In this document: in pieces, positions 3,545 through 64,000 of the stretch
Layout of the letters: every line of letters starts with the position of its first letter
Position numbering within the stretch: position 1 is the first letter of the stretch
NCBI RefSeq assembly: GCF_023055435.1
Contig: NW_025964353.1
Location: 806,001 to 870,000, forward strand
Source of the DNA: Haliotis rufescens
Lineage: Eukaryota
DNA: 64,000 bases
Direction: 5' to 3'
The notes under the pieces: generated by a model
Databases searched by the model: none
Told to the model about the DNA's origin: nothing
What the model saw: the letters and a program-made list of their open reading frames with translations, nothing else
Translations under genes and position numbers: made by a program

Positions 3545-6500
3545 ATGTCACAGTTAGGAATTATCATTTTGATTGTGTGTATTGGACCTGTGTTTATTCA
3601 TGGAGTAGATTTTCCTCCACATTGGATCAAATCTGGAGTTGACGTCAGCACGGAAACAACTGTTGAAAAGTCGGACTCAACTGCGGACGATACGATTCGA
3701 TACTTCAAGAAATGGAGAATTGCGGCGGATTATAGGAAAGCATCTACTATATTTATGGTGAAACTTTTTAATTTCCTACAGAAGGGATCGCCCGTTGCTA
3801 AAGCGGCGGGTGGAAGGTTGAACCAACCCGATCTGAGATTGTCCGACACCATTAGGAGTTTCTCCACCAAAGGTAAGAGCACGGGGACATGTATAGTACG
3901 AAGAATGGATGTTTGTATTGGACAATGTTAGGATGATAAATATTCGTCCATTATATAGTTGAGAATACCAATGTCACCAATAGAACCATACCCATGAAAT
4001 AGGTTGTGAAAACATCAATTTCAAATGTTTTACAAGTAGTGGCCGTTATTAGCCAACTGAAATTAGATGAACGAGATATGTTGTTTCTGGTGTTATAAAG
4101 CAGGATCACGAAAGAAATTTAAGGACATTATTATACGAATTTGAAAGGTTTAGCAAAACGAATGAACAGTGGAAGGGATTTATTGGTGGTTTTGTTCAGA
4201 GAATCATCAACTCGGGTCCAAATCAAAAACAACAAACAAACAGAATAATTTCGCATATGTAACTAAATACTTGAAACACTTTAGTTTAAAAAAAATGTTT
4301 AACATGTACAGAGTAGTTGAATGTTTAAAGCAATATATTTGCGATTTACAAACAACATTTAACCAACCATTATGTCATGAAATGTTTAGGCCCGGAACAA
4401 CTGCATACGTTCGAAGTGTACCATACTTAAATACATTTTGTGTGTAAGTTCATACAATACATATGACTTTTATATGAATGGATTTCTTGAGACAGTTCTG
4501 AGAAAAACATGGTATACGCAACTTCGTGTTCAACATGGAACACTTGGATGTGTACGACAATCCCAATTCTCTTATACGTAAACATGTTGGCTGTCTGTGA
4601 TATATCTATGCTACACAACCGGCCTATTCACCATGACATTTGCATTAGAAACAAGTGTGATGCATGTATGTGTTACATACAATCAACTAAGTAGGTTCTG
4701 CGATACATGGTTCACGAGCCACACTAAGAATATCATTAAAAAACATTTAAATATGGAAACAACCAAGTTTCGCGAAATTTCCTGATTTATGTCTGAAATA
4801 TATCATAATTTGGCAATGCTTTTCTGATAATTAACAAGTTATTATATATATGTGTTGCCAGAAGTACGATGTAAAAATAGATGATGTGCTATTATACGTT
4901 ATCTAAGGGAAGGGTATAACAACTGAAGCTAAAGACAATCACATATAAATATTGGTATTGGATCAGTTTATGAACTATTTCATATGTAAAGAGAATTATT
5001 CAATCCTCGAAAACAATAAATACATGTTTGATTTATTATAATTGGAATAGAAATACTTCTTCGGTTTCCTCACTATGAAAAACTAAAACTGAGGAACAAA
5101 TGCTCAATATATTGTGGCCTATGACTATGGCAGATAGTTTTTCGAGATAAAAGTGTAGTTAATATGGTTATTTTTTATCATTTCAAAATAATAGCAGTTG
5201 CATCTGTTCACATGACTAAAGTTTTAAGTGTATATGAAACATGATTTTATGCTAATGATACTTCGGTGTAAATGACAAATAGCGTCAAATTAGGATATTT
5301 GCTTACGAGTCAACATCAACTGCCTGGTAAAAGAAAGTACACACCCATATTTGATGGTGGTTAAAAATGAAACCAACGAGAAATTGTTATTCGATCGCGA
5401 TGTATTCGATACATATTTGTGTTTTGGACCTTAAGTTTGCAATGTTTTGTATCGGAGACTATTACCAGCCAAGTAACGATTTTTTTATAACGTTTGTATT
5501 GTTTTGGTCAAATTCAATTTTCAAGTACATACTTTTTTTGCCCTGCAGTTTACATTTAATAATATATTCATTATGTTCCTGAATTTGTCTCTTACATTTT
5601 GTCTGGATTGTCACTTTTATAAAAAAAATAATTTAAAAACTACTTTTAATTTCAACTTAAGAGGAGTTCTGATGAACCTGTAATTAAGGGTAAACTAAAG
5701 CAATCCGTATGCTATCTTACAGTTGGGAAGGGCACGTGTCGTGATAATGACGCAGGGGCCTTAATCGTTTTTTTGTCAATTGAAGATGAACACATATTTT
5801 ATTCATCTAGCCACAGTATTCGCATAAGCGTAGTTTATACCATTATTATTATTATGGTTGTTGTTGTTGTTGTTGACGGAGCTGATAGGCCACACACCTA
5901 TAAAGATACACACATTGTTACTTTCTTTAAGTTTACACCGGATGCTATATTATTGTGTATATACACACATTCCAACATTAATTGTCGGGCAAACGAAAGG
6001 CAATTGGATTTGGCCCAAACATTATAAATGTTATGAAAACGTTATTTGGGGGGGGGGGGGGGGGGGGGGGGGGGTGGCAGAAACCTATGATTGTGGATTC
6101 GAATCCCGGTTCGCCCCAATTATGTTTCTAGGTTTGTCAGCGGCATACCCGTGCTCGTGAGTTTCACCGAAGTGGTAAACGTCTGGGACCTGCATCACTT
6201 GGGGCTTTCCTCCCACATTAAGCTGACACGCCGTGATATAACTGGAATACTGTTAAAAGCGGCGTTACACTCACTCACTCACGTTACTTGGCGCTGAAAA
6301 CAGTCGCCGAAACACTGTAAACTTAAGGTCCAAAACAAAAACTATTATACCCGACCCAAATGCATCCCCATCGAGTAACAATTTCTTTTTTGTTTCATCT
6401 TTAGCCTCCATCAAACATGGGTGTATACTTTATGTCTGTTGTCCGACAGTTTATGTGTACTAACGTCAAAATCAGTGCATAACCACTCCCATATTAGGAG

Positions 6501-7482
6501 CGATTTCTCATCGCAACCATGACTGTCAAACATTAATAAGTTGTGGGTCAGGTGGCCTCGTGTACTGAAATATATCTATCAATCTTGCTTATATGTTGTC
6601 TAATATTTCACATATGATACATATATACGTATTTTTGCAGAAATTCTACAACCAGAAGGAAGTAAAAAAGTGGAAATGCGTTTTAAGATTCCCTTTTTAC
6701 CCCGAAATGAACGACTTCGATTGGCTGAGTTCCGCTGTTTGCGTAAAAAATCCCGAAACGTAAGGACTAAGAAGTACAAGATCAAGATAGACATTTTCAA
6801 GGGAGGAAGTCTTGTCAGCAAATTTGCCTTTAGGACACCGCCTTTTGTTCACGCTGAATATGATGTGTTTGACGTCAGTCGCGCACTGACCCCTTGGATC
6901 AACGGTTACCATGGTAACGTCACGATAAACATTAAACTTCCATTGAAATATACCAAAACACTTTCTAAAAACAAGTCAAAGAAAGCTGATTCATTAATCG
7001 TCTTTTACCTGGAAGATGATGAATTCCTGAAAAATATGTATGAAAGTTACACAGCGGAAGAACGTGCGTCTAAGACGTCAAGTGACGTTATGTCACGTGG
7101 GAAGAGGGCGTCACGTGGCAAGAATCGACGTCATCGAAAGAACAGGAGATGGAACAAAGCAGGAAAGCGAGAGGGCTGTCATGTGTACGACTTTGACGTT
7201 GACTTCAACACTATCGGATGGGGACAGTGGATCATTCATCCAAAACGTTTCAATTCCAAAGTCTGTTACGGCAGCTGTCCCTCCCCCATCGACATCCGCT
7301 ACAAGCCCACCAACCACGCGATGTTGCAGTCACTGATGAGAACCAAACGGTCAAACTCTGCACCCGTCCCCTGTTGTGTTCCTACCAAGTTAAAAGCACT
7401 GAGCATGTTATACTTCGAATATGACGAAATTGTGGTACGTCACCACGAAGACATGATTGCTGATGAGTGTGGTTGTCGATGA
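3545..7482 (+). CDS. nodal: Nodal, TGF-beta superfamily ligand, 389 aa; exon 1 3545-3872, intron 3873-6640, exon 2 6641-7482
   Basis: Signal peptide MSQLGIIILIVCIGPVFIHG. Donor AAG|GTAAGA and acceptor tttttgcag|AA join in phase 1 (328+842=1170 nt). Furin site RGKR. Seven-cysteine domain with Nodal-type motifs IGWGQWIIHP, PTNHAMLQSL, CCVPTKL-x-x-LSMLY and RHHEDMIADECGCR. Confidence 0.92.
6048..6074 (+). repeat. Poly-G tract (about 27 nt) in the nodal intron
   Basis: Uninterrupted G homopolymer. Confidence 0.9.
6090..6282 (+). mobile_element. tRNA-derived SINE with (CACT)n tail
   Basis: B-box-like ggattcgaatccc at the 5' end; 3' end cgccgtgatataactggaatactgttaaaagcggcgttacactcactcactcac is shared with other SINE copies in the window. 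Confidence 0.65.
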
Positions 7483-8274: not shown

Positions 8275-8388
8275 AGGTGGTGGGGTACCCTAGTGGTCAA
8301 AGCATTCATGAAAGCCCACTTCTGGTGTCCCTTGTCGTGATATTGCTTGAATAATACTTAAAGCGGCGTAAAACCATACTCACTCACT
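8275..8388 (+). mobile_element. Internally deleted (CACT)n-tailed SINE
   Basis: A-box-like ctagtggtcaaagc joined to aagcccacttctggtgtccc...gcggcgtaaaaccatactcactcact, the reverse complement of the 9302-9455 copy. Confidence 0.7.
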
Positions 8389-9826: not shown

Positions 9827-10211
9827 CTTATTTATCACTTGAGAAACGACTTAAACTATAATAGTCGCAGATAAAATCCCAGCTTGAGTGACCTTGCCCC
9901 ATCCCTTCAAACTATTCAATAATGTCAATCTTCTACAAAGTCCGAGTTCAGGTAAAATGATGTAAACAGTGAACCCCTGTTAGAGCAGACCCCTTTGGTC
10001 CGACAACTGCGTCTTTCGGAAAATTACTGTTGAGAACGTCTTTGTGATTGCAAGGTGACACTATTCCATATACCCATGATTTATTGATGTGGAAATTAGT
10101 TAAAGGTGCCATATTCGAAGCCTAAATTGTTTGATAGGCATTACTTAGAAGTTGACGGATGACAAGGTAGACACAATTTTATGGATGACAACTTCTTTAA
10201 TACTGTGAAAA

Positions 10212-14160: not shown

Positions 14161-15421
14161 TCACCGACAGCCACATTCAGAGGCGATCATGTCCTCGTGA
14201 TGACGTACAACGACTTCGCCATTCTACACAACAAGGGGAGGGAGCGATGTTGGAACGCTTGCTTCTCATGAGTGACTGCAACATGGCGTGGTTGGTGGGT
14301 TTGTGGCGGACGTCGATCGGGGAGGGACAGTTTCCGTGACAGAATTTGGAGTTGAAGCGTGTAGGGTGGATGATCCACTGTCCCCAGCCGATTGTGTTGA
14401 AGTCCACGTCAAAATCGTACAGACGACAGCCTTGTTTCTTTCCTGCCTTATTCCATCTTCTGTTCTTGCGTCGACGACGTCTGATTATGTCAGGTGCAGA
14501 TCTCTTACCACGCGATGCGCTATTCTTCAATCCATCGTATGTAGACTGCTCTTTAAACAAAACGTTTTGAAGAAAGTCCTGATTTTCCAAATACAAAACA
14601 AGTAAGTTTTCATAGACTTCGGATGTTGTTTTCGAAAGAAGTCGGAAGAAAGTCCGCGGCATTTCCACATGAATGGTGACGTCACCGTGGTAACCGTTGA
14701 CCCAGGCAGTGATGGCTCGACTGATGTCAAAAACAAAATCTTCACGGTGTGTAGTAGGTTGGACTCTGATGGTAACTTTTCTTGCGATCTTCTTTCCCTT
14801 GAAAATGCTGACCTTGACCTTGTACTTCTTTAGAAGGGAGAGAGCGCGTGGGCACCGGAACTCAGCTAATCGGAGACTCTCGTCCTTAGGCAGACTAGGT
14901 ATCTTGAACGAAAGGCCAAATCTGCTGCTTTCATTGATTTTACTCATGTCTGGAACAGGAAAACAGTATCATATGAACGAGCAAATAAAAAGTGAAGCAT
15001 TTTCCCAAAATAGATTCTTGTTTGGAATCAGAAAGACATTTTCCGGGTTTGTATTGCACATCTACACATCAGTCAGTCTGGTGTTAAGCTTACCTTTAGC
15101 TGCGAAGCTCCTGATAGTGTCGACTTTCATAAAATCAGCTGTTTTGAGCTTTCTGCCTGCTGCTGTTGCAAGTGGTGCCCCCTTTTGAAGAATATTAAAC
15201 AATCGCAGCATGAATTTGGTTGAATCCTTTTGATAATCAACTGTATGACTCAGCTTGCTGACAAAAGGGGATATGTCTGCAACATGTTTTCCCTCATTCC
15301 GGTAAGTGTGGGGTTTGACTTGAAACTCCTGGTTTAGCCATTGTTTGGGTGAAGCTAAGCGACGTGCTCCAACATTGGCGAGATATGTCAGAAATAAAAT
15401 GGCGATTTTACACTGCGACAT
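14161..15421 (-). pseudogene. nodal: Nodal type A copy 1, frameshifted; exon 1 15421-15094, exon 2 from 14949
   Basis: Exon 2 is 789 nt to the homologous stop versus 827 nt in intact copies. A 38-nt deletion between 14225 and 14226 turns CCVPTKL...ECGCR into CCVEWRSRCTSSRGHDRL* (stop at 14177), losing the terminal CxC. Confidence 0.88.
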
Positions 15422-18438: not shown

Positions 18439-19737
18439 TCACCGACAGCCACATTCAGAGGCGATCATGTCTTCGTGATGACGTACAACGACTTCGCCAT
18501 CCTCCACGTACATCATACTGAGAGGTTCCAGTTTGGTAAGGACACAACAAGGGGAGGGAGCGACGTTGGAACGCTTGCTTCTCATGAGTGACTGCAACAT
18601 GGCGTGGTTGGTGGGTTTGTGGCGGACGTCGATCGGGGAGGGACAGTTTCCGTGACAGAATTTGGAGTTGAAGCGTGTAGGGTGGATGATCCACTGTCCC
18701 CAGCCGATTGTGTTGAAGTCCACGTCAAAATCGTACAGACGACAGCCTTGTTTCTTTCCTGCCTTATTCCATCTTCTGTTCTTGCGTCGACGACGTCTGA
18801 TTATGTCAGGTGCAGATCTCTTACCACGCGATGCGCTATTCATCAATCCATCGTATGTAGACTGCTCTTTAAACAAAACGTTTTGAAGAAAGTCCTGATT
18901 TTCCAAATACAAAACAAGTAAGTTTTCATAGACTTCGGATGTTGTTTTCGAAAGAAGTCGGAAGAAAGTCCGCGGCATTTCCACATGAATGGTGACGTCA
19001 CCGTGGTAACCGTTGACCCAGGCAGTGATGGCTCGACTGATGTCAAAAACAAAATCTTCACGGTGTGTAGTAGGTTGGACTCTGATGGTAACTTTTCTTG
19101 CGATCTTCTTTCCCTTGAAAATGCTGACCTTGACCTTGTACTTCTTTAGAAGGGAGAGAGCGCGTGGGCACCGGAACTCAGCTAATCGGAGACTCTCGTC
19201 CTTAGGCAGACTAGGTATCTTGAACGAAAGGCCAACTCTGCTGCTTTCATTGATTTTACTCATGTCTGAAATAAGAAACAGGATCATATTAAAAAGTAAA
19301 TAAAAAGGTGAAGCATTTTTCCAAAATAGATTCTTGTTTGGAATCAGAAAGATATTTTCCGGGTTTGTATTGCACATCTACACACCAGTCAGTCTGGTGT
19401 TAAGCTTACCTTTAGCTGCGAAGCTCCTGATAGTGTCGACTTTCATAAAATCAGCTGTTTTGAGCTTTCTGCCTGCTGCTGTTGCAAGTGGTGCCCCCTT
19501 TTGAAGAATATTAAACAATCGCAGCATGAATTTGGTTGAATCCTTTTGATAATCAACTGTATGACTCAGCTTGCTGACAAAAGGGGATATGTCTGCAACA
19601 TGTTTTCCCTCATTCCGGTAAGTGTGGGGTTTGACTTGAAACTCCTGGTTTAGCCATTGTTTGGGTGAAGCTAAGCGACGTGCTCCAACATTGGCGAGAT
19701 ATGTCAGAAATAAAATGGCGATTTTACACTGCGACAT
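18439..19737 (-). CDS. nodal: Nodal type A copy 2, 384 aa; exons 19737-19410 and 19265-18439
   Basis: Signal peptide, 144-nt GT-AG phase-1 intron, RGKR site, intact seven-Cys domain; private change CCVP to CCVL. Confidence 0.88.
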
Positions 19738-22700
19738 TTTCTGATAGCTGGATTGATGTTTTGGTTTGTCAGTGTAGGATGCAGCAATGCAAGTGATGAT
19801 GTGATAGCTTCAGTGTGGCGTTTTATACCAGACCCTACTACTTGTGTAAACAAGACAAGTGGTAACATAATGGTCGGGTGTTGGCGAGGTGTCCATATTC
19901 CTTCAGGCAAAGATTATAATCTGTCGTAAGGACATGTCGCGTGCATCAGATCTAGTTGTAGCTTCTTCATGTAAAATAACACCTTCTGGTTACATCACTA
20001 CATCATACCTTTAATGCAAGGTTTAGAGGAAAATAACCTAATATTTTGTGAAATGAACAATTAAACACACATTAGCCATACATATTCTGATACCTCGGAT
20101 GCTTTAAATTAGTAATTAATTTTGCTAATTATTCGTGAAATGTCTACTTTAAAAGGTAATCTTATGACAGTGGAGAGACTTCTTGGATTTTGTATGTTTT
20201 CAATTTGTTTGATTTTACTGTTCAAATATGTACTTATACGCTGTTTCTCATAGATATAAAATATATTCAATATTCATAGATAAACAAGGATTTCGATATC
20301 CATTCACCAGACAGGGGCGATCATCCCCAATCCACAGTAACAAGCCCGTCTCCCTGTCTCATCTGACTGTCGAACAATCACTGTCTGATCCTGTCTTCAG
20401 GATCACTCTCATTGCGCTAATCTAAGCTTATTACTGTTGTCATTAGTTTAAGAAAACAACTCGTCAGGTTCAAGAGTAACCCATTACACGCCACAGTGAA
20501 TGTTCATGGAACGGATTACACCTTTGTTTCTTTAGATTGCAGAGATTTTACTTCACTCCTATCCTTTTCGCAAACATTTACGCAGTATGTAAGATCAATA
20601 TAAGCATAGAAAGTATCACTACCTACATATCATTTCTACTTTTCCCTAACAGGAATATTTCCAAGATTGGTATCTACACGTTGGTATCGTCTGTAATATA
20701 ACTACATTGTGTTTGTTAAAGTAGACACAATGTATGGATAACAACTTCTTGGAAAGGCGACGTTTCGGTATACATACTTATATTTATGTTATGTGTGTTA
20801 CCTTCACTCCAAGTCCATTTACGTTGGAATCTAATGATTCACTTCAAGATATCAGAACACATCTTCTCTTAAGGAAACTGTACATGGCATATGACGATCA
20901 CATATAGAATATTGTTTTTGTCTGTTCCAAACACACACACTTTCTTGCGTTTTAAATGACGAGGGAAGTGTATGGGTACATGTCATGAAACGAGATTGTC
21001 TATCATCAAAACAATACAAAGATCAATTATTTTAAATCCTTTTCAGCTGAGTGTCTATCAATATCCCGACATGTGTTATTGCGGCAATGTTTATGACGAA
21101 GTCGCCATGCATGTCAGACACCACAGTCAGCATATGCAGAAGTGTCAGACAGTTAGCATGTCTCCTGTGTTATCATCATTGCTATTTGGCCACTTGTTGT
21201 TGAATCAATATGGTGAAAGTGAATCAAAAGACATAATTAACTTCTTGATCTGTGAAGAATGAACAATTTGTACATCTCTGGAGATAACCAAAGTCGTTAT
21301 TTTCTGATTGGCTCTATTAGAATTCCAAAGTGGATTCCAATTTTCAGCTACTCGTTATGCTGAGAGTAACTGAACTATCTCAATAAACAAACTTTATATA
21401 ATTTGTTAAAATCACTGCTCCTTGAAAATAAAATATGTTCAATGTAATAACATATCTGTTCCAAACCATTTGCTGAATAGCAGTAAAATCATATTGCGTT
21501 GTCTATTTTCCGTTGCAGTATGCTCTTTAAAACAACAGGAATGGAAGACACTCATTTGAATGAAGAACTATTGTTTTCAGCGAAATTATGTGTAAGCATG
21601 AGAATATTTTCTCCATAAATTATCTTTAAACTAATTCCTAAATGATGTATCTTTTAATTTCTACTATTGATAGTGAAGTAGGTTGATACATTTACGAAAA
21701 GGTTATTATTAGATTTAACTCTACACACTGTATCAGAAACACTCCATTAATTCGTTCTGCTGTTCAACATAAAGGCAACGTTAGACGCCGAAAAACAACC
21801 ATCATTACTTGTAACAAGCCTGTCTTCCAGTGAGTGAGTGAGTATTGTTTTACGCCGCTTTTAGCAATATTCCAGCAATATTACGGCGGGGAACACCAGA
21901 AATGCTGTCTTCCAGACTCGTCTAACTAGAATAATCATAGTCTAACCCTGTTAATGATTAAACTGCTAAACTTTTCCACCAATAATCCTATCCAATCGAT
22001 GTCCTTGTTGGTGAAATGAAAACAGTTCATCACACTATTCTGTCAGAGATTGAAGACATTTTTATTGGTATTTACAGAACTGACTTTGAGGCCCTTCGCG
22101 ATCTGCATGGGTAGACTCAGTCGCTTGTAGTTGCAAGCAAATATATTAAAGTGACAGTACAGCTATTTGAGAGTGTTCATAGAAATATCGAAGTTGGATG
22201 TAAACATGACAGGGAATATTATTAGGTTCAACAACTTCTTTATTATTCAAATACATGTACAACGTTCCATGGCTACTTCTTGTACCTTCACCTGATGAAG
22301 TTGTGTATGTGCAATAAAGAAGTTGTTATCCATAATAATACTCCTTGTCACGAGTACATGTTTTTGAAAAAAAAAAACAACAATAATTTATATTTAGGAA
22401 CTAAAATGCTGTCACAAGTACGCGTTCAACTAATTTACCGATTGTGAGGTGCATTCAAATGTTGCAGGAATATTTCTTTTACAATCGTTTATGATGGAGT
22501 AAGCCACATAGACTGAAGGGTTTATCTTCACATTGTGAGTGCAAAATGTTCTTTGTAGCACTAGAGGTACACATTGTACAGTGTATTATCAGAACATGTC
22601 CAAGACAGATCGAACAATTAACCAGTGAAAGACAAAGCATCAAGACATTTTATCAATACAAGTTTATTAGTATAAATAATAATAGCACTGATACGGTTAT

Positions 22701-22746: not shown

Positions 22747-24045
22747 TCACCGACAGCCACATTCAGAGGCGATCATGTCTTCGTGATGACGTACAACGAC
22801 TTCGCCATCCTCCACGTACATCATACTGAGAGGTTCCAGTTTGGTAGGGACACAACAAGGGGAGGGAGCGACGTTGGAACGCTTGCTTCTCATGAGTGAC
22901 TGCAACATGGCGTGGTTGGTGGGTTTGTGGCGGACGTCGATCGGGGAGGGACAGTTTCCGTGACAGAATTTGGAGTTGAAGCGTGTAGGGTGGATGATCC
23001 ACTGTCCCCAGCCGATTGTGTTGAAGTCCACGTCAAAATCGTACAGACGACAGCCTTGTTTCTTTCCTGCCTTATTCCATCTTCTGTTCTTGCGTCGACG
23101 ACGTCTGATTATGTCAGGTGCAGATCTCTTACCACGCGATGCGCTATTCATCAATCCATCGTATGTAGACTGCTCTTTAAACAAAACGTTTTGAAGAAAG
23201 TCCTGATTTTCCAAATACAAAACAAGTAAGTTTTCATAGACTTCGGATGTTGTTTTCGAAAGAAGTCGGAAGAAAGTCCGCGGCATTTCCACATGAATGG
23301 TGACGTCACCGTGGTAACCGTTGACCCAGGCAGTGATGGCTCGACTGATGTCAAAAACAAAATCTTCACGGTGTGTAGTAGGTTGGACTCTGATGGTAAC
23401 TTTTCTTGCGATCTTCTTTCCCTTGAAAATGCTGACCTTGACCTTGTACTTCTTTAGAAGGGAGAGAGCGCGTGGGCACCGGAACTCAGCTAATCGGAGA
23501 CTCTCGTCCTTAGGCAGACTAGGTATCTTGAACGAAAGGCCAACTCTGCTGCTTTCATTGATTTTACTCATGTCTGAAATAAGAAACAGGATCATATTAA
23601 AAAGTAAATAAAAAGGTGAAGCATTTTTCCAAAATAGATTCTTGTTTGGAATCAGAAAGATATTTTCCGGGTTTGTATTGCACATCTACACACCAGTCAG
23701 TCTGGTGTTAAGCTTACCTTTAGCTGCGAAGCTCCTGATAGTGTCGACTTTCATAAAATCAGCTGTTTTGAGCTTTCTGCCTGCTGCTGTTGCAAGTGGT
23801 GCCCCCTTTTGAAGAATATTAAACAATCGCAGCATGAATTTGGTTGAATCCTTTTGATAATCAACTGTATGACTCAGCTTGCTGACAAAAGGGGATATGT
23901 CTGCAACATGTTTTCCCTCATTCCGGTAAGTGTGGGGTTTGACTTGAAACTCCTGGTTTAGCCATTGTTTGGGTGAAACTAAGCGACGTGCTCCAACATT
24001 GGCGAGATATGTCAGAAATAAAATGGCGATTTTACACTGCGACAT
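22747..24045 (-). CDS. nodal: Nodal type A copy 3, 384 aa; exons 24045-23718 and 23573-22747
   Basis: Same structure, open frame, intact seven-Cys domain. Confidence 0.9.
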
Positions 24046-44302: not shown

Positions 44303-45601
44303 TCACCGACAGCCACATTCAGAGGCGATCATGTCTTCGTGATGACGTACAACGACTTCGCCATCCTCCACGTACATCATACTGAGAGGTTCCAGTTTGG
44401 TAGGGACACAACAAGGGGAGGGAGCGACGTTGGAACGCTTGCTTCTCATGAGTGACTGCAACATGGCGTGGTTGGTGGGTTTGTGGCGGACGTCGATCGG
44501 GGAGGGACAGTTTCCGTGACAGAATTTGGAGTTGAAGCGTGTAGGGTGGATGATCCACTGTCCCCAGCCGATTGTGTTGAAGTCCACGTCAAAATCGTAC
44601 AGACGACAGCCTTGTTTCTTTCCTGCCTTATTCCATCTTCTGTTCTTGCGTCGACGACGTCTGATTATGTCAGGTGCAGATCTCTTACCACGCGATGCGC
44701 TATTCATCAATCCATCGTATGTAGACTGCTCTTCAAACAAAACGTTTTGAAGAAAGTCCTGATTTTCCAAATACAAAACAAGTAAGTTTTCATAGGCTTC
44801 GGATGTTGTTTTCGAAAGAAGTCGGAAGAAAGTCCGCGGCATTTCCACATGAATGGTGACGTCACCGTGGTAACCGTTGACCCAGGCAGTGATGGCTCGA
44901 CTGATGTCAAAAACAAAATCTTCACGGTGTGTAGTAGGTTGGACTCTGATGGTAACTTTTCTTGCGATCTTCTTTCCCTTGAAAATGCTGACATTGACCT
45001 TGTACTTCTTTAGAAGGGAGAGAGCGCGTGGGCACCGGAACTCAGCTAATCGGAGACTCTCGTCCTTAGGCAGACTAGGTATCTTGAACGAAAGGCCAAC
45101 TCTGCTGCTTTCATTGATTTTACTCATGTCTGAAATAAGAAACAGGATCATATTAAAAAGTAAATAAAAAGGTGAAGCATTTTTCCAAAATAGATTCTTG
45201 TTTGGAATCAGAAAGATATTTTCCGGGTTTGTATTGCACATCTACACACCAGTCAGTCTGGTGTTAAGCTTACCTTTAGCTGCGAAGCTCCTGACAGTGT
45301 CGACTTTCATAAAATCAGCTGTTTTGAGCTTTCTGCCTGCTGCTGTTGCAAGTGGTGCCCCCTTTTGAAGAATATTAAACAATCGCAGCATGAATTTGGT
45401 TGAATCCTTTTGATAATCAACTGTATGACTCAGTTTGCTGACAAAAGGGGATATGTCTGCAACATGTTTTCCCTCATTCCGGTAAGTGTGGGGTTTGACT
45501 TGAAAATCCTGGTTTAGCCATTGTTTGGGTGAAACTAAGCGACGTGCTCCAACATTGGCAAGATATGTCAGAAATAAAATGGCGATTTTACACTGCGACA
45601 T
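44303..45601 (-). CDS. nodal: Nodal type A copy 8, 384 aa; exons 45601-45274 and 45129-44303
   Basis: Intact; several private prodomain substitutions (NQDF, DTVR, KVNV, LFEE). Confidence 0.9.
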
Positions 45602-48624: not shown

Positions 48625-49922
48625 TCACCGACAGCCACATTCAGAGGCGATCATGTCTTCGTGATGACGTACAACGACTTCGCCATCCTCCACGTACATC
48701 ATACTGAGAGGTTCCAGTTTGGTAGGGACACAACAAGGGGAGGGAGCGACGTTGGAACGCTTGCTTCTCATGAGTGACTGCAACATGGCGTGGTTGGTGG
48801 GTTTGAGGCGGACGTCGATCGGGGAGGGACAGTTTCCGTGACAGAATTTGGAGTTGAAGCGTGTAGGGTGGATTATCCACTGTCCCCAGCCGATTGTGTT
48901 AAAGTCCACGTCATAATCGTACAGACGACAGCCTTGTTTCTTTCCTGCCTTATTCCATCTTCTGTTCTTGCGTCGACGACGTCTGATTATGTCAGGTGCA
49001 GATCTCTTACCACGCGATGCGCTATTCTTCAATCCATCGTATGTTGACTGCTCTTTGACAAAAACGTTTTGAAGAAAGTCCTGATTTTCCAAATACAAAA
49101 CAAGTAAGTTTTCATAAGCTTCGGATGTTGTTTTCGAAAGAAGTCGGAAGAAAGTCCGCGGCATTTCCACATGAATGGTGACGTCACCGTGGTAACCGTT
49201 GACCCAGGCAGTGATGGCTCGACTGATGTCAAAAACAACATCTTTATGGTGTGTAGTAGGTTGGACTCTGATGGTAACTTTTCTTGCGATCTTCTTTCCC
49301 TTAAAAATGCTGACCTTGACCTTGTACTTCTTTAGAAGGGAGAGAGCGCGTGGGCACCGGAACTCAGCTAATCGGAGACTCTCGTCCTTAGGCAGACTAG
49401 GTATCTTGAACGAAAGGCCAAATCTGCTGCTTTCATTGATTTTACTCATGTCTGAAATAAGAAACCGAATCATATAACAAGTAAATAAAAAGGTGAAGCA
49501 TTTTCCCAAAATAGATTCTTGTTTGGAATCAGAAAGATATTTTCCGGGTTTGTATTGCACATCTACACACCAGTCAGTCTGGTGTTAAGCTTACCTTTAG
49601 CTGCGAAGCTCCTGATAGTGTCGACTTTCATAAAATCAGCTGTTTTGAGCTTTCTGCCTGCTGCTGTTGCAAGTGGTGCCCCCTTTTGAAGAATATTAAA
49701 CAATCGCAGCATGAATTTGGTTGAATCCTTTTGATAATCAACTGTATGACTCAGCTTGCTGACAAAAGGGGATATGTCTGCAACATGTTTTCCCTCATTC
49801 CGGTAAGTGTGGGGTTTGACTTGAAACTCCTGGTTTAGCCATTGTTTTGGTGAAGCTAAGCGACGTGCTCCAACATTGGTGAGATATGTCAGAAATAAAA
49901 TGGCGATTTTACACTGCGACAT
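48625..49922 (-). CDS. nodal: Nodal type A copy 9, 384 aa; exons 49922-49595 and 49451-48625
   Basis: Intact; 143-nt intron; most divergent intact A copy (HHKDVV, VFVK, YDYD, DVRLK). Confidence 0.9.
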
Positions 49923-52259
49923 TTTCTGATAGCTGGATTGATGTTTTGGTTTGTCAGTGTAGGATGCAGAAATGCGAGCGATGATGTGATAGCTTCAGTG
50001 TGGCGTTATATAGCAGACCCTACTACTTGTGTAAACAAGACAAGTGGTAACACAATGGTCGGGTGTTGGCGAGGTGTCCATATTCCTTCAGGCAATGATT
50101 ATAATCTGTCGTAAGGACATGTCGCGTGCATCAGATCTAGTTGTAGCTTCTTCATTTAAAATAACATCTTCTGGTTAAATCAGTACATCATACCTTTAAT
50201 GCAAGGTTTTGAAGAAAATAACCTAATATTTTGTGAAATGAACAATGAATCACATATTAGCCATACATATTCTGATACCTCGGATACTTTAAATTAGTAA
50301 TTAATTTTGCTAATGTATATTCCCATTTCGTGAAATGTCTACTTGAAATGGTAATCTTATGACAGTGGAGAGACTACTTGGATTTTGCATATTTTCAATT
50401 TGTTTGATTTTACTGTTCAAATATGTACTTATACGCTGTTTCTCATAGATCTAAAATATATTTAATATTCATAGATTAACAAGGATTTCGATATCCATTC
50501 ACCAGACAGGGGCGATCATTCCCATTCCACAGTAACAAGCCTGTCTCCCTGTCTCATCTGACTGTCGAACTATCACTGTCTGATCCTGTCTTCAGGATCA
50601 CACTCATCCTGCTAATCTAAGCTTATTACTGTTGTCATTGGTTTAAGAGAAACAACTCGTCAGGTTCAAGAGTAACCCATTACACGCGACAGTGAATGTT
50701 CATGGAACGGATTACACCTTTGTTTCTGGAGATTGTATAGATTTTACTTTACTCCTATCCTTTTCGCAGACATTTACGCAGTATGTAAGATCAATATAAG
50801 CATAGAAAGTATCACTATATACATATCATTTGTACTTTTCCCTAACAGGAATATTTCCAAGATTGGTATCTACACGTTGGTATCGTCTGTAATATAACTA
50901 CATTGTGTTTGTTAAAGTAGACACAATGTATGGATAACAACTTCTTTAACACTGGAAAGGCGACGTTTCGGTATACATACTTATATTTAGGGGATGTATG
51001 TTACCTTCACTCCAAGTTCATTTACGTTGGAATCTAATGATTCACTTCAAGATATCAGAACACATCTTCTCGTAAGGAAACTGTACATGGCATATGACGA
51101 TCACATATAGAATATTGTTTTTGTCCGATCCAAACACACACACTTTCTTCCGTTTTAAATGACGAGGGAAGTGTATGGGTACATGTCATGAAACGAGATT
51201 GTCTATCATCAAAACAATACAAAGATCAATTATTTTAAATCCTTCTCAGCTGAGTGTTTATCAATATCCCGACATGTGTTATTGCGGCAATGTTGATGAC
51301 GAAGTCGCCATGCATGTCAGACACCACAGTCAGCATATGCAGAAGTGTCAGACAGTTAGCATGTCTCCTGTGCTATCATCATTGCTATTTGGCCTCTTGT
51401 TGTTGAAACAATATGGTAAAAGTGAATCAAAAGACATAATTAATTTCTTGATCTGTGAAGAATGAATAATTTGTACATCTCTGGATATAACCAAAGTCAT
51501 TATTTTCTGATTGGCATTATTAGAATTCCAAAGTGGATTCCAATTTTCAGCTAGTCATTATGTAGAGAGTAACTAAACTATCTCAATAAAGAAACTTTTA
51601 TATAATCTGTTAAAATCACTGCTCCTTGAAAATAAAATATGTTAAATGTAATAACATATCTGTTCTAAACCATTTGCTGAATAGCAGTTAAATCATATTG
51701 TGTTGCCTATTTTCCGATGCAGTATAATCTTTAAAACAACAGGAGTGGAAGACACTCATTTGAATGAAGAACTATTGTTTTTAGCGTATTATGTGTAAGC
51801 ATGAGAATAATTTCTCCATAAATGATGTATCTTTTAAATTCTTCGATTTATATTGAAGTAGGTTGATACATTTACGAAAAGGTTATTATTAGATTTAACT
51901 CTACACTCTGTATCAGACACACTCTATTAATTCGTTCTGCTGTTCAACAACTTCTTTATTATTCAAATACATGTACAACGTTCCATGGCTACTTCTTGTC
52001 CCTTCACCTGATAAAGTTGTGTATGTACAATAAAGAACCTGTTATCCATAATAATACTCCTTGTCACGAGTACATATTTTTGAAAAAAACCACAAACAAT
52101 AATTCATATTTAGGAACTATAATGCCGTCACAAGTACGCGTTCAACTAATTTACCGATTGTGAGGTGCATTCAAATGTTGCTGGAATATGTCTTTTACAA
52201 TCGTTTATGATGGAGTAAGCCACATAGACTGAAGGGTTTATCTTTACATTGTGAGTGCA

Positions 52260-54390
52260 AAATGTTCTTTGTAGCACTAGAGGTACATAATGTATAGTGT
52301 ATTATCAGAACATGTCCAAGAAAGATCGAACAATTAACCAGTGAAAGACAAAGCATCAAGACATTTTATCAATACAAGTTTATTAGTATATGCATCAGAT
52401 CTAGTTGTAGCCTCTTTATGTAAAATAACACCAACTGGTTACATCACTACATCATACCTTTAATGCAAGGTTTTGAGGAAAATAACCTAATATTTTGTGA
52501 AATGAACAATTTATCACATATTACCCATACATATTCTGATACCTCGGATGTTTTAAAATTTTTAATTAATTTCGTTAGTGTATATAACCCTTTAGTGAAA
52601 TCGCTACTTTAAATGATAATATTTTAACAGGGAAGAGACTTCTTGGATTTTGTATGTTTTCAATTTGTTTGATTTTTCTATTCAAATATGTACTAGTACG
52701 CTGTTTCTCATGAATATAAAATATATTCCATATTCGAACATAAACAAGGATTTCGATATCAGTTCCCAGACGGAGGCTATCATGCCTCTTCAACAGAAAC
52801 AAGCTCGTCTCCCTGTCTCATCTTACTGAGGTTCAAGAGTAAGGTTCAAGAGTAACCCATTACACGCCACAGTGATTGTTCATGGAACGGATTATGCTTT
52901 TGTTTCTCTAGATTGTATAGATTTTACTTTATTCCTATCCTTGTTCGCAAACAGTTACGCAGGATGTGAGATCAATATAAGCATAGAAATATTTCCAAGA
53001 TTGGTATCTACACGTTGGTATCTTCTGTAAAATAACTAGATTGTGTACGTTACCTTTACTCCAATTTCATTTACGTTGGAATCTAATGATTCACATTAAG
53101 ATATCAGAACACATCTTCTCGTAAGGAAACTGTATGTGGTATAAAGATCACATATACAATAGTGTTTTTGTCCGATCCACACACAAACACTTACTTCCGT
53201 TTAAAAGGGCGAAGAAAATGTATGGGTACATGCCATGAAACTAGATTGTCTTACATTTAAACATTATAAAGATCAAGTATTTTAAATCTGTCTCAGCTGA
53301 GCAAAATGTTTCGACATGTGTTATTACAGCAATATTGATGACGAAGTCGCCATGTATGTCAGACACCACAGTCAGCATATGCAGAAGTGTCAGACAGTTA
53401 GCACGTCTCCGAGGCTGTCATCATTGCTATTTGGCCTCGTGTTGTAGAAACAATATGGTAAAACTGATAATCAAATGACATAATTGACTTCTTGATCTGT
53501 GAAGAATGAATAATTTGTACATCTCTGGATATAACCATAGTCATTATTTTCTGATTTTTCTCCATTTAGAATTCCAAAATGGATTACAATTGTCAGCTAG
53601 TCGTTATACTGAGAGTAACTAAACTATCTCCACAAACAAACTTTAAATGATTTGTTAAAATCACAGCTCCTTGATGAAAAGAAAATAATATGAAGACGCT
53701 CGTTTGAATTTGAAACTATTGTTTCATGATAACGTATTATGTGTAAGCATGATAATATTTTCTCTATACATTATTTTAAAACAAATACCTTAATGTATCT
53801 TTAAAATTCTACGGTTCATATGAAGCAGGTTGATACATTTACGAAAAGTGTTTTATAGATTTAACTCTGCACACTGTATCATAAATACTCCATTTATGCG
53901 TTCTGCTGTTCAACATAAAGGCAGCACCAGACGCCGAACGACAACCATCATTACTTGTAAAAAGCCTGTGTTCCAGACTCGTCTTACGAGAGTAGTCTCA
54001 CCCTGTTCATGATTTAAGTGCTAAACTTTTCCACCAATAATCTCTTTCCATCGATGTCCTCGTTGGTGGAATGAAAGCAGTTCATCACACTAGTCTGTCA
54101 GAGATTGAAGACATTTTTATTGGTATTTACAGAACTGACTTTGAGGCCCTTCGAGATCTTTATGGTTAGGCTCAGTCGCTTGTAGCTGAAAGAAAAATAT
54201 TAAAGTGACAGTACAGTTATTTGAGAGCGTTCATTGGAATATCGAAGTTGGATCATGGGCTACTCCTTGTCCCTTCACCTGACGACATTGTGCAAGTAAA
54301 ATAAAGAAGCTGCTGTCCATAATAATACTCCTTGTGATACGCGTACATGTTTTTGAAAACAAAATGAATGAATAATTTATATTTTGGAAC
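52260..54390 (-). pseudogene. Gene-less relic unit: 3' flank fused directly to the upstream spacer, whole nodal gene deleted
   Basis: Junction ...gtttattagtata|tgcatcagatctag... at 52390/52391 joins sequences about 1575 nt apart in intact units (18366 and 19942 in copy 2). The following spacer is a diverged type A homologue. Confidence 0.85.
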
Positions 54391-56241: not shown

Positions 56242-57674
56242 TCATCGACATCCACATTCAGAGGCGATCACGTCCTCGTGATGACGTACAACAACTTCGC
56301 CATCCTCCACGTACATCATGCTGAGAGGTTCCAGTTTGGTTGGGACACAACACAGGTCGGGAGCGGCGTTGGAGCGCTTGCTTCTCATGAGTGACTGCAG
56401 CATGGCGTGATTGGTGGGTTTGAATCGGATGTCGATGGGGGAGGGACAGTTTCCGTGGCAGAATTTGGAGTTGAAGCGTGTCGGGTGGATGATCCACTGT
56501 CCCCAGCCGATCGTCTTGAAGTCCACGTTAAAGTCGTACAGACGACAGCCTTGTTTCTTCCCTGACTTGTTCCATCGTCTGTTCTTGCGATCTCGACGTC
56601 TGCTTGTGGCATGTGCTGATCTTTTAGCGCGTGATGCTATATTACCTAATCCATCAAAAGTGGAATGCTCTTCGACTTTGTAGGTTTCCAAAAGGTTTTG
56701 AAGAAAGTGGCGATTTTCCAAATAAAATACAAGTAAGTATCCATAAGTTTCGGATGCTGTTTTCAAAAGAGTTCTGGAGAATGTCCGTGGTATTTCCACA
56801 TGAATGGTGGCGTCACCGTGGTAACCGTTGATGAAGGTATTAATGGCTCGACTGATGTCAAATACATAATATTCACCCTGTGTAATAGGTTTGACGCTGA
56901 TGTTAGCTTTTCGTGCGATATTCTCTCCCTTGCGAATGATGACCTTGACCCTGTACTTCTTTAAAGGAGATACAGAGCGTCTGCACCGGAACTCAGCTAA
57001 TCGGAGACGTTCGTTCTCAGGTAGACTAGGAATCTTGAACGATAGCTCGACTCTCTTTCTTACATTCTTTTGTGTCATGTCTGGAATTAAACATACATTG
57101 CATGAAAACCAAAGTTGTACAAATAAAACACTTTCATCAAGAATATTCTTGCAGTGAATGCTTAACGTCTGCGAGCCATTCATCTAATTTCCATCCCTAT
57201 TTGGCATTTTATGCGCATTGCAATTGTTTCGGCAGACAATCGAGACTGATTATTCCCTGGCCTTGATATATTGAATTTCTTACTTTTTTCATATTGTTTG
57301 TTAATGATTAAAATCGTATGTGATCTGACTCCAGGTTAAAGATTACCTTTAGCCGTGAAGCTCCTGATGGTGTCTGCTTTCTTGAAATCAGCTGTGTTCA
57401 GCTTTCTGCCTGCCGCTCTTGCAAGTGGTGCCCCTTTTTGAAGAATGTTAAACAATTGTACCATGAGTTGTGTTGAAGGCTTTTGATAATCAACTGGATG
57501 ACTCAACCTTCCAACAATAGGGGACAGATCTGCAAGAGGTCTTGCACCATTCCCATAAGTATCAGTTAGGACTCGAACATCTTGGGTTAGCAATTGTTTG
57601 GGAAAATCAATACCTCGTCCTCCAACATTTCCGACACATATCAGAAAGAAAATTGCCATTTTAAACTGCGACAT
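56242..57674 (-). CDS. nodal: Nodal type B copy 1, 388 aa; exons 57674-57347 and 57080-56242
   Basis: Signal peptide MSQFKMAIFFLICVGNVGG; donor AAG|GTAATC, acceptor ttccag|AC, 266-nt intron; RAKR site; intact seven-Cys domain ending HHEDVIASECGCR. Confidence 0.9.
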
Positions 57675-60365: not shown

Positions 60366-61798
60366 TCATCGACATCCACATTCAGAGGCGATCATGTCCT
60401 CGTGATGACGTACAACAACTTCGCCATCCTCCACGTACATCATGCTGAGAGGTTCCAGTTTGGTTGGGACACAACACAGGTCGGGAGCGGCGTTGGAGCG
60501 CTTGCTTCTCATGAGTGACTGCAGCATGGCGTGATTGGTGGGTTTGAATCGGATGTCGATGGGGGAGGGACAGTTTCCGTGGCAGAATTTGGAGTTGAAG
60601 CGTGTCGGGCGGATGATCCACTGTCCCCAGCCGATCGTCTTGAAGTCCACGTTAAAGTCGTACAGACGACAGCCTTGTTTCTTCCCTGACTTGTTCCATC
60701 GTCTGTTCTTGCGTTCTCGACGTCTGCTTGTGGCATGTGCCGATCTTTTAGCGCGTGATGCTATATTACCTAATCCATCAAAAGTGGAATGCTCTTCGAC
60801 TTTGTAGGTTTCCAAAAGGTTTTGAAGAAAGTGGCGATTTTCCAAATAAAATACAAGTAAGTATCCATAAGTTTCGGATGCTGTTTTCAAAAGAATTCTG
60901 GAGAATGTCCGTGGTATTTCCACATGAATGGTGGCGTCACCGTGGTAACCGTTGATGAAGGTATTGATGGCTCGACTGATGTCAAATACATAATATTCAC
61001 CCTGTGTAATAGGTTTGACCCTGATGTTAGCTTTTCGTGCGATATTCTCTCCCTTGCGAATGATGACCTTGACCCTGTACTTCTTTAAAGGAGATACAGA
61101 GCGTCTGCACCGGAACTCAGCTAATCGGAGACGTTCGTTCTCAGGTAGACTAGGAATCTTGAACGATAGCTCGACTCTCTTTCTTACATTCTTTTGTGTC
61201 ATGTCTGGAATTAAACATACATTGCATGAAAACCAAAGTTGTACAAATAAAACACTTTCATCAAGAATATTCTTGCAGTGAATGCTTAACGTCTGCGAGC
61301 CATTCATCTAATTTCCATCCCTATTTGGCATTTTATGCGCATTGCAATTGTTTCGGCAGACAATCGAGACTGATTATTCCCTGGCCTTGATATATTGAAT
61401 TTCTTACTTTTTTCATATTGTTTGTTAATGATTAAAATCGTATGTGATCTGACTCCAGGTTAAAGATTACCTTTAGCCGTGAAGCTCCTGATGGTGTCTG
61501 CTTTCTTGAAATCAGCTGTGTTCAGCTTTCTGCCTGCCGCTCTTGCAAGTGGTGCCCCTTTTTGAAGAATGTTAAACAATTGTACCATGAATTGTGTTGA
61601 AGGCTTTTGATAATCAACTGGATGACTCAACCTTCCAACAATAGGGGACAGATCTGCAAGAGGTCTTGCACCATTCCCATAAGTATCAGTTAGGACTCGA
61701 ACATCTTGGGTTAGCAATTGTTTGGGAAAATCAATACCTCGTCCTCCAACATTTCCGACACATATCAGAAAGAAAATTGCCATTTTAAACTGCGACAT
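60366..61798 (-). CDS. nodal: Nodal type B copy 2, 388 aa; exons 61798-61471 and 61204-60366
   Basis: Same structure as B1; variants WIIRP and EDMI. Confidence 0.9.
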
Positions 61799-64000
61799 TT
61801 TCAGACAGTTGGATAGATATTTTGGTGTGCAAGCGTAGGATGTAGCAATGCAAGTGATCATGTGATACCTCCCGTGTAGCGTTATATACCAGACCCAACT
61901 ACTTGTGTATACAAGACAAGTGGTCATTCAATGGCCGGGTGTTGGCGAGGTGTTCAAATACCTTCAGGCAATGCTTATAATCTGCTATAGAGAATTGGTA
62001 GTCGCGTGTATTATGTGTAATTGTACGCATCGTATGTAACATAAACACGTATCTGCTACATTAATATATTTTTAAGCGTTACTGTGATTTGACAGATAAT
62101 ATATTTTGCAAACGAATAATTTGAAAAAAATAATTACATAGATCTTATTACCATATGTTTCAAGCAAGGTGTTTATGAAAATATTCTGTAATATACTACA
62201 GTGGAAGTTGTCTTCTTAAGGCATGAATTATAGATTCTCTGACATTAAACATTGTTATTTTAATATACGCATAAGCTATATACAGGAATCCGATGTCCTC
62301 AGATTGAATTACGCTTTCTTGATTCAATGAAATTGCACAACTAATTCTGATCTTACATGTATATTCAGTATATTTATATATTGGTGCCAAGTCCCAGAAA
62401 CTGTATATGCTTCTTTAAATCACGGCTTATGCATATTCACAATTCGTCAGTGTAAGATGGCCTTCATCTTTACAGGTACATACTCTTTTCACTATTCAGT
62501 TCCCAGACAGCGGCTATCATGCTCCTCCACAGTAACTAGCCCGTCTCCCTGTCTCATCTGACTGTCGAACAATCACTGTCTGATCCTGTCTCCCGGATCA
62601 CACTCATCCCGTTAATCTCAGCTAGTTCCTAGTTTCCTTCAAGAAAACACCTCGTCAGCTTTTAGAGTGAACGATTACACGCCTCAGTGAATATTCATCA
62701 AAGCGATTCTTAAATGCTGATTGCAAGGTTTCATTGCACTGTTGTTATTGTGAGCACATATTCTCATAGTATGTAACAATCAAGTTAAGCATATAGAAAG
62801 TACCCAAATATAAGATATTAGTTTCATATTTCTGAACTACAATGTTCCATTATTGCTATCTCTCTGTTTACATGTTGCTACTTTCTGTAATACACTGTAT
62901 GTGTTAGTTCCTCGCCAAAGCTATTCATAAGAGGAATTGAAGGATGCATTTCAAGTAGTTAAGTTCACCAAGCTTGTTAGGAAACCAAAGTGATCAACAC
63001 AGCAACATTTTCTCCCGTTTTATGAGGATAAAGCATGTAATGACACATGTCGTGATAAGAGATTATCTATCATCAAAACATCATAAAGATCAAGTATTTT
63101 TAATCCTCCTCAACTAAGTGTGTATCAGTATCCCGCCATGCCTTGGTGCAACAACGTCGATGTAGACGTCGCCATGTCAGACAACACACTCAGCCTCAGT
63201 GTGTTAGCATGTCTCCTGTCTTATTATTATTATCATTGCTCTGTGGCCCTGTGATCTTGAAACAACATGAAATTGTTAACACTGAAAGGACATTATTGAC
63301 TTCTTTGTTAAATAAATAATTGGCACATCCCTGAATGTTTTACAAATTATGACTTACTTATTGGTGTTATTGGAATTCAAAAAATGGTTTAAAACTATCA
63401 GCTAATCACTAACCCGAGAAAAAATAAACATTGCCTTCATTGCCGAAATATATATTATAATGAAATAAAAAGAGGGTTCCTGGAACATACCATAATATTC
63501 TGAATAAGATTCTTTTGTCTTTGATTTGGAATCCTTAATCATAGTCCACTTTCAATTGGTGGTAAGTAATTAAGGAACAGACAGCTACAGAGGTTTCGAA
63601 AACATTGTATGACTTGTAGCCACTCTAGTTAAATGATGCAGTCTTGTTTGGAATGTATATATGAAAACACAAAGTTTTCGCCGTATCCATATATAATTCG
63701 TCTTTCCGGACGTTTTTTACAAGGAATGGCACCACCCGGAAAGGAAGGGTTTCACTCTTCACAATTTTACTGCCAACAATGATTGATCGTTGATTAATTC
63801 TGCCGAATGTCGCTGACACCACATTCGTTGACGCATATAGAAAACATGGTTAGGATATGGCGTGTGAAAATCAATTGATGTTTCTAAACATACGTTAAGG
63901 TTTTTTATTTCGCTTGCTGCAGACATGTCACTTTCACTGGTGGCCTCTTTGTTAATCTCCTTTGTGTCAAAGGCATGCAACTACTTGTGCTAATCAGGTT

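What the first reader, a model, noticed from the sequence alone, without database searches (positions are those of the whole stretch)
3545..64000. Tandem amplification of the morphogen gene Nodal: at least 12 copies in three subfamilies in an invertebrate-like genome
Seen: one long-intron nodal gene, nine type A and two type B compact paralogues; 11 of the 12 have intact frames, splice sites, furin sites and promoters. Established: nodal is usually single or low copy in invertebrates, controls left-right asymmetry and shell chirality in gastropods, and is dosage-sensitive; tandem nodal amplification is known in Xenopus (nodal3, nodal5). Inference: a convergent amplification in a probable mollusc, possibly giving a rapid early burst of Nodal or a new role for the derived ligands.
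Basis: partly seen in the sequence, partly recalled or inferred. Interest (0 to 1): 0.93.

Follow-up and report, generated by a model that had tools for sequence, protein, structure and literature searches.

The report
Abalone tandem Nodal gene array
Red abalone carries about 25 head-to-tail copies of Nodal, the signalling gene that sets left-right asymmetry in snails, where most invertebrates have one; this is real and larger than first reported, but whether and when the extra copies are expressed is untested.

Summary
The window is Haliotis rufescens (red abalone) scaffold C575:806001-870000.

It holds:
- one long-intron Nodal gene (G1, + strand);
- nine compact type A copies on the - strand, in 4.3-kb units. 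Eight are intact; A1 has a 38-bp frameshifting deletion;
- the first two type B copies.

The B array runs on beyond the window to 15 copies, giving 25 copies in all, 22 of them intact. No copy lies on any other contig.

All copies fall inside a well-supported Nodal clade (97/95) with vertebrate, echinoderm, hemichordate, brachiopod and Lottia Nodal. They keep a signal-peptide-like N-terminus, furin sites and 7 cysteines.

The mature ligand is under purifying selection: dN/dS is 0.14 between A and B, and 0.09 between A/B and G1. A roughly 170-bp TATA promoter is shared by G1, A and B and occurs nowhere else in the genome.

RefSeq models show multi-copy arrays in H. cracherodii, H. rubra and H. 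asinina too. H. rufescens B copies form a species-specific clade, which points to array turnover.

The genes carry automated annotations, but I found no paper describing the array.

The parts
3365..3544 (+). G1 proximal promoter with a TATA box, conserved with the A and B promoters
   Evidence: Alignment. A genome-wide search finds this block only upstream of nodal copies on C575 (75% identity over 167 bp to B copies).
3545..3872 (+). G1 exon 1: start codon, signal-peptide-like N-terminus, N-terminal prodomain; donor GTAAGA
   Evidence: The N-terminus matches the full-length H. rubra model P0092 (print-out).
3873..6640 (+). G1 intron, 2768 nt, phase 1
6641..7482 (+). G1 exon 2: prodomain, furin sites, 110-aa mature Nodal domain
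   Evidence: Pfam TGF_beta E 3.7e-31. The C-terminal 270 residues are identical to H. cracherodii 'nodal homolog' P0005.
14161..15421 (-). A1, a pseudogene: a 38-bp deletion in exon 2 shifts the frame after the CC motif
18439..19737 (-). A2, intact (P242L in the mature domain)
22747..24045 (-). A3, intact. Exon 1 at 24045-23718, intron at 23717-23574, exon 2 at 23573-22747.
27055..28353 (-). A4, intact
31375..32673 (-). A5, intact. Its unit differs from the A3 unit by one substitution.
35683..36981 (-). A6, intact
39991..41289 (-). A7, intact. Both exon translations and the junction residue are identical to RefSeq model XP_048242869.1 (P0078, 384 aa).
44303..45601 (-). A8, intact
48625..49922 (-). 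A9, intact and the most diverged A copy (about 3.8% per unit). It groups with H. cracherodii type A.
20291..20507 (-). Distal block 560-770 bp upstream of each A start codon, conserved with B (one example; it repeats in every unit). RefSeq models P0074 and P0075 place an alternative first exon here.
50186..54253 (-). Two degenerate A-like partial units that lack the gene, lying between the A and B arrays
56242..57674 (-). B1, intact (388 aa, 266-nt intron, donor GTAATC)
60366..61798 (-). B2, intact
62218..64000 (-). Start of the B3 unit. The B array continues outside the window to C575:~927,600.

Best explanation
This is a real, abalone-lineage tandem amplification of the Nodal ligand gene.

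Shown:
- An old duplication (synonymous sites saturated) separated a conventional long-intron Nodal (G1) from a derived paralogue lying tail-to-tail with it.
- The derived paralogue split into types A and B (dS about 0.32).
- Each type was then multiplied head-to-tail in 4.1-4.3-kb units, to 9 A and 15 B copies in Haliotis rufescens.
- Neighbouring units are the most alike, and some are identical or differ by one base.
- H. rufescens B copies form a species-specific clade, and type A numbers at least 3 RefSeq models in H. cracherodii against 9 copies here.

Inferred from these points: the arrays turn over by unequal crossing-over or gene conversion.

The copies look like working genes (about 75% likely). 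Of the 25, 22 keep the frame, the splice sites, a signal-peptide-like N-terminus, two RXXR sites and all 7 cysteines. The mature domain is under purifying selection. All three types keep the same ~170-bp TATA promoter, although synonymous sites between G1 and A/B are saturated.

Most likely function (inferred, about 40%): the short-intron copies are co-regulated with G1 and multiply Nodal transcript output during a short embryonic interval. Tandem nodal5/nodal3 arrays are thought to do this in Xenopus.
For: Copy map and intactness.

No copies on other contigs, so this is not haplotig duplication.

Family assignment:
- Pfam TGF_beta.
- The best solved-structure match is the Nodal/BMP2 chimera 4n1d.
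- Nodal clade at 95/99* and 97/95*.
- Only Nodal among named non-mollusc hits.

Species, and RefSeq gene models from other assemblies in other abalones:
- H. cracherodii has at least 3 A-type and at least 12 B-type models on an 82-Mb scaffold.
- H. rubra has 5 models on one 94-kb contig.
- H. asinina has 2.
- RefSeq model P0078 matches my A7 exon translations and junction residue.

Selection:
- A-B: mature dN/dS 0.14, prodomain 0.5-0.6.
- A/B-G1: mature 0.09, with dS above 1.2.

Species-wise clustering. Distance-dependent unit similarity. Promoter conservation and uniqueness.
Against: - No expression evidence could be obtained.
- In the protein collection, the only Logan-derived members of the A and G1 clusters are unspliced genomic-type ORFs, and the B cluster has none. 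This is a weak hint that transcripts are rare in the sampled libraries.
- Among the youngest A copies, all 8 coding differences in exon 2 are non-synonymous. Selection on individual recent copies is therefore not demonstrated.
- Units that are identical (B6 = B7) or differ by one base (A3 and A5) are hard to count, so the copy number in the array cores could be off by a few.
- RefSeq models of type B start at exon 2 and lack a signal peptide.
Confidence: 0.72

Rival explanations
1. The derived A/B ligands have taken on a role other than more of the same Nodal signal. They could be heterodimer partners or modulators of G1 Nodal, or act in a different tissue or life stage such as gonad, mantle or shell growth, or metamorphosis.
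For: - The prodomains of A and B evolve fast: dN/dS 0.5-0.6 against 0.14 for the mature domain.
- A and B share distal upstream blocks that G1 lacks.
- A/B mature domains differ from G1 at about 21% of residues.
- The precedent is amplified Xenopus nodal3, which is functionally divergent (general knowledge; gene clusters in PMC12344233).
Against: - All 7 cysteines and the furin sites are kept.
- The proximal promoter is shared with G1.
- The mature domain is strongly constrained.
Confidence: 0.2
2. The array is largely neutral copy-number expansion. Recent segmental duplicates have not yet decayed and contribute little or nothing to function.
For: - Core units differ by 0-0.5%.
- All 8 exon-2 differences among A2-A8 are non-synonymous. 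This is compatible with neutrality: P is about 0.1 for 0 synonymous changes out of 8.
- Three copies are already broken.
- A full-length LINE sits inside the B array.
Against: - Multi-copy arrays persist in four abalone species that diverged long ago.
- A and B have stayed under purifying selection since their split at dS 0.32.
- Within B, dN/dS is 0.3-0.45.
- The promoters are conserved beyond synonymous sites.
Confidence: 0.12
3. Assembly artefact: the assembler over-expanded, or mis-joined haplotypes of, a much smaller cluster on an unplaced 2.6-Mb scaffold.
For: - C575 is a small scaffold.
- B6 and B7 units are identical, and A3 and A5 differ by one base.
- Read depth could not be checked.
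Against: - There are 9 distinct A-unit sequences. Of the 13 B units compared, 12 are distinct, and similarity falls smoothly with distance.
- The 154 kb examined contains no Ns.
- No second copy of the locus exists elsewhere in the assembly.
- A separately assembled species, H. cracherodii, has at least 15 gene models of the same two types on a chromosome-scale scaffold.
Confidence: 0.07

Closest known systems
Gastropod Nodal (Lottia gigantea nodal B6RSZ9; Biomphalaria nodal; Grande & Patel 2009)
   Same: - Same clade in the trees.
- 48% identity over the exon-2-encoded part of type A, and 75% in the G1 mature domain.
- Same pre-pro-ligand layout, with 7 cysteines.
   Different: Those species show one hit each in these searches. 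Abalone has one conventional gene plus 24 derived compact copies. The asymmetric expression and Pitx linkage known for Lottia and Biomphalaria were not tested here.
Xenopus tandem Nodal arrays (Xnr5/nodal5 and Xnr3/nodal3; Takahashi et al. 2006, Suzuki et al. 2017, reviewed in PMC12344233)
   Same: Lineage-specific head-to-tail multiplication of a Nodal paralogue next to single-copy relatives, with a copy number that is hard to fix.
   Different: - The origin is independent, in a protostome.
- Here all intact copies keep the seventh cysteine. By my recollection, not checked here, Xnr3 has lost one.
- Early zygotic expression is established for the frog genes but unknown for abalone.
Other mollusc Nodal duplicates (Sinanodonta woodiana 3 hits, Babylonia areolata 2 hits)
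   Same: More than one Nodal-clade gene in a mollusc genome.
   Different: These are two or three diverged paralogues. No array of tens of near-identical units is evident from these searches.

Membership tests
Nodal subfamily of TGF-beta ligands | C-terminal TGF-beta cystine-knot domain with 7 conserved cysteines | tested here: met
   Pfam PF00019 E 4e-31 to 8e-33. There are 7 Cys in the mature domain of every intact A and B copy; G1's mature sequence shows the same cysteine pattern by eye.
Nodal subfamily of TGF-beta ligands | Pre-pro-protein: signal peptide, prodomain, RXXR furin cleavage site before the mature domain | tested here: met
   Read directly from the translations: a hydrophobic N-terminus and two RXXR motifs just before the 110-aa mature domain in G1, A and B. 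No signal-peptide predictor was run. The Pfam propeptide model matches only G1, and weakly (E 8e-4).
Nodal subfamily of TGF-beta ligands | Placement inside the Nodal clade, apart from the BMP, GDF, activin and myostatin clades | tested here: met
   The Nodal set forms one side of a branch at 97/95* and includes a vertebrate (Narcine), echinoderms, hemichordates, Lingula and Lottia. The genome's own other TGF-beta genes fall outside. Named Vg1/GDF1/univin and ADMP references were not available.
Nodal subfamily of TGF-beta ligands | Signals through activin-type receptors to Smad2/3 | not testable with these tools
   This needs ligand assays.
Nodal subfamily of TGF-beta ligands | Embryonic, side-specific expression upstream of Pitx (the gastropod role) | not tested
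No paper with abalone nodal expression was found.
Tandemly amplified Nodal arrays of the Xenopus nodal5/nodal3 type | Many head-to-tail copies of one Nodal paralogue at a single locus | tested here: met
   9 A and 15 B units on one strand of one contig.
Tandemly amplified Nodal arrays of the Xenopus nodal5/nodal3 type | Very early zygotic transcription | not tested
   No RNA data could be reached. The short introns (144 and 266 nt against 2768 nt) are only suggestive.

The most novel reading that the evidence does not exclude
Abalones have independently evolved a high-copy, short-intron Nodal battery driven by the ancestral Nodal promoter. It would deliver a burst of ligand in the fast-cleaving embryo, a protostome counterpart of the frog nodal5/nodal3 arrays. 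Its copy number turns over quickly between species, so Nodal dosage would be an evolving and possibly polymorphic trait in a strongly asymmetric gastropod.
Probability: 0.35. Interest if true: 0.8.

Novelty: new member of a known kind. Interest (0 to 1): 0.64.

Why it matters
Nodal is a dosage-sensitive morphogen and the key left-right signal in snails. In the searches here, most other invertebrate species returned one Nodal-clade gene.

A 25-copy array has three features of note:
- the mature ligands are conserved;
- the promoter is shared with the conventional gene;
- the array turns over rapidly between abalone species.

It would be the first protostome parallel to the frog Nodal arrays. 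It gives a concrete system for asking how embryos use gene copy number to set morphogen output.

It also matters practically:
- RefSeq names some copies "GDF6-like" and models type B without its first exon.
- Abalone expression studies that treat nodal as one gene will mis-assign reads.
- Copy number may vary among farmed and endangered abalone stocks.

Tried and rejected
Tools that gave nothing:
- Tandem Repeats Finder found nothing, because the 4.3-kb units exceed its 500-bp period limit. BLAST of one unit against the window was used instead.
No run ids were available. Transcripts and read depth are therefore untested.
The H. cracherodii locus DNA could not be fetched, and the cross-species comparison rests on RefSeq proteins only.
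- One translation request failed on a frame slip and was corrected.

Ideas rejected:
- A1 cut off by the neighbouring retroelements. It carries a 38-bp internal deletion, and its old stop codon and 3' flank are still present.
- A missing B copy in the 9-kb gap between B10 and B11. The gap is a full-length LINE insertion in the spacer.
- A conserved 3' element shared by G1 and A. It is a dispersed short repeat with at least 1800 candidate copies in the genome.
- Positive selection among the youngest A copies. The count is 8 non-synonymous against 0 synonymous differences, too few events to call (about P 0.1).

Literature: five searches found no description of an abalone nodal array. The H. iris genome paper discusses Pitx, not nodal copy number.

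Spliced models: exons were searched separately by reference. dN/dS and the trees were computed exon by exon, with the split codon dropped.
Full report
**What is there.**
The window is G000:C575:806001-870000 of a 1.33-Gb assembly. C575 is 2,645,980 bp long. RefSeq proteins named "nodal homolog", "nodal-like" or "nodal homolog 2-A-like [Haliotis rufescens]" lie on a contig of exactly that length. One of them (P0078, XP_048242869.1, 384 aa) matches both exon translations and the junction residue of my model of copy A7. The organism is therefore red abalone, a vetigastropod mollusc.

ORF listing, a unit-against-window BLAST and direct reading of the splice sites give twelve genes in the window.
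- G1 lies on the + strand. Exon 1 is 3545-3872, the intron is 2768 nt in phase 1, and exon 2 is 6641-7482.
- Nine type A genes lie on the - strand, with start codons from 15421 to 49922. The intron is 144 nt (143 in A9) and the product 384 aa.
- Two type B genes lie on the - strand, at 56242-57674 and 60366-61798. The intron is 266 nt and the product 388 aa.
- All three types split the same codon after 109 codons.
- Seven exon ORFs were scanned against Pfam. All four exon-2 ORFs (G1, A1, A3, B2) match TGF_beta, at E 4e-31 to 8e-33 for the intact ones; the exon-1 ORFs match nothing.

**Extent.**
The array does not stop at the window's end. A six-frame search of the whole assembly and the neighbouring 90 kb show type B continuing to window-equivalent ~121,600. 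That makes 15 B units.
- Thirteen B copies are intact.
- B12 is frameshifted.
- B15 has exon 2 only.

A 9-kb interval between B10 and B11 is not a lost copy. It is a full-length LINE in the spacer, with a 1201-aa ORF carrying endonuclease and reverse-transcriptase domains. A1 is disabled by a 38-bp deletion in exon 2.

The total is 25 copies, 22 of them intact. No Nodal-like match lies on any other contig. The 154 kb examined has no Ns.

**Is it Nodal?**
- The best solved-structure match of the type A mature domain is a Nodal/BMP2 chimera, ahead of BMP2.
- A search with the exon-2 product of type A finds H. cracherodii "nodal homolog" at 97% identity. After other molluscs, including the experimentally studied Lottia nodal B6RSZ9 at 48%, come hemichordate and echinoderm Nodal, and only then BMP10, GDF2 and Dpp.
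- A search scored on the G1 mature domain alone returns only Nodal among named non-mollusc hits: sea urchins, starfish, crinoids, Lingula, Ptychodera and the ray Narcine.
- In maximum-likelihood trees of mature domains, all abalone copies sit in one Nodal clade. Support is 95/99* and 97/95*, with one label change.
- That clade excludes the genome's own BMP2/4-like, BMP5-8-like, activin-like and myostatin-like genes, and BMP9/10 and Dpp.
- Named Vg1/GDF1/univin and ADMP references were not available, so that part of the test is open.
- Every intact A and B copy keeps 7 cysteines. All three types show two RXXR motifs ahead of a 110-aa mature domain and a hydrophobic N-terminus.

**History.**
Within Haliotis, G1 orthologues from four species form one clade. 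All derived copies form its sister clade, at 100/100 each.

| Comparison | dS | dN/dS, mature domain | dN/dS, prodomain |
|---|---|---|---|
| G1 against A/B | 1.2 in the mature domain; above 1.7 or not computable elsewhere | 0.09 | 0.17-0.25 (exon-2 part) |
| A against B | about 0.32 | 0.14 | 0.5-0.6 |

(All values.)

Within each array the units are very close and the similarity falls with distance.
- A2-A7 differ by 1-22 substitutions per 4.3 kb.
- A8 differs from them by about 85 and A9 by about 165.
- B6 and B7 are identical, and B5-B9 differ by 0-11.
- The two ends of the B array differ by about 50.

H. rufescens B copies form a species-specific clade (97/97*) among H. cracherodii B copies. 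A9 groups weakly with H. cracherodii type A, and A2-A8 look like a red-abalone burst.

RefSeq holds these gene models:

| Species | Models | Location |
|---|---|---|
| H. cracherodii | at least 3 A-type and at least 12 B-type | one 82-Mb scaffold |
| H. rubra | 5 derived copies | one 94-kb contig |
| H. asinina | 2 derived copies | one 79.6-Mb scaffold |

I infer turnover by unequal crossing-over or gene conversion on top of an old duplication.

**Regulatory sequence.**
The 170-190 bp before the start codon, including a TATA box, align among G1, A and B.
- A and B are 85% identical there, and B and G1 79% over 131 bp.
- The G1 block is found nowhere else in the genome except in front of array copies.
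- G1 and A/B are saturated at synonymous sites, so this conservation implies selection on a shared promoter.

A and B also share two distal blocks that G1 lacks. One of them, 560-770 bp upstream, contains the site that RefSeq models P0074 and P0075 use as an alternative first exon. It also contains the element another first-stage note called a candidate enhancer.

A block shared by the G1 and A 3' flanks proved to be a dispersed repeat.

**How it probably works.**
- Shown: a real multi-copy Nodal locus with conserved ligands and promoters.
- Inferred: the compact copies are co-regulated with G1 and raise Nodal output in a short embryonic interval, as proposed for the frog arrays (PMC12344233). 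I put this at about 40%.
- A divergent role for A/B is at about 20%.
- A largely neutral expansion is at about 12%.
- An assembly artefact is at about 7%.

**Limits.**
I could test neither transcripts nor depth, and I could not read the H. cracherodii DNA.
- The only Logan-derived members of the A and G1 protein clusters look like unspliced genomic ORFs. That is at most a weak hint that transcripts are rare in sampled libraries.

**Novelty.**
The genes are already in RefSeq under automated and partly misleading names such as "GDF6-A-like", with type B modelled without exon 1. Five full-text searches found no description of the array. It is a new, protostome instance of a known phenomenon.

Noticed in passing
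L007:3651-8449 (window-equivalent 97,651-102,449): A full-length non-LTR retrotransposon sits in the spacer between B10 and B11. It has an uninterrupted 1201-aa ORF with endonuclease and reverse-transcriptase domains, so it is probably young.
   Followed up: partly
window 10000-14035: A retroelement-rich stretch lies between G1 and the array. It holds reverse-transcriptase fragments (13239-13700, 11209-11553) and shows very strong strand skew (GC skew about 0.4). The array homology ends at about 14035.
   Followed up: partly
window 20412, 24720, 29028 and the same place in each A unit: RefSeq models P0074 and P0075 (319 aa) begin with a short exon about 675 bp upstream of the normal start codon. 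It is spliced into the middle of exon 1, which would remove the signal peptide. The exon lies inside a block conserved between A and B. It could be a real upstream promoter or exon, or an annotation artefact.
   Followed up: partly
window 8313-8392 and about 840-920 bp past each A stop codon: A short dispersed repeat with at least 1800 candidate copies genome-wide, ending in a CACT-type tail. It mimics a conserved 3' element between G1 and type A.
   Followed up: yes
B copies, e.g. window 57347-57674 and 61471-61798: RefSeq models type B as 278 aa starting at the first Met of exon 2, in both H. rufescens and H. cracherodii. An upstream exon-1 ORF with a signal-peptide-like start and a GT donor is intact in all 14 B copies that have it. 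H. rubra and H. asinina models include its counterpart.
   Followed up: partly
G000:C2:36404234-36404578 (L016): A very divergent TGF-beta domain gene fell inside the Nodal clade in the first tree on a very long branch (length 5.2). This is probably long-branch attraction, and the gene was left out of the second tree.
   Followed up: no
protein hits: Several other molluscs show more than one Nodal-clade protein: Sinanodonta woodiana has 3, two of them on one scaffold, and Babylonia areolata has 2. Some unnamed Logan/ENA clusters have many members (P0053 has 34, P0024 has 11). Nodal multiplication may therefore not be confined to abalone.
   Followed up: no
window 50186-54253: Two decayed A-like units that keep the spacer but have lost the gene lie between the A and B arrays. 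They are evidence of past copy loss.
   Followed up: partly
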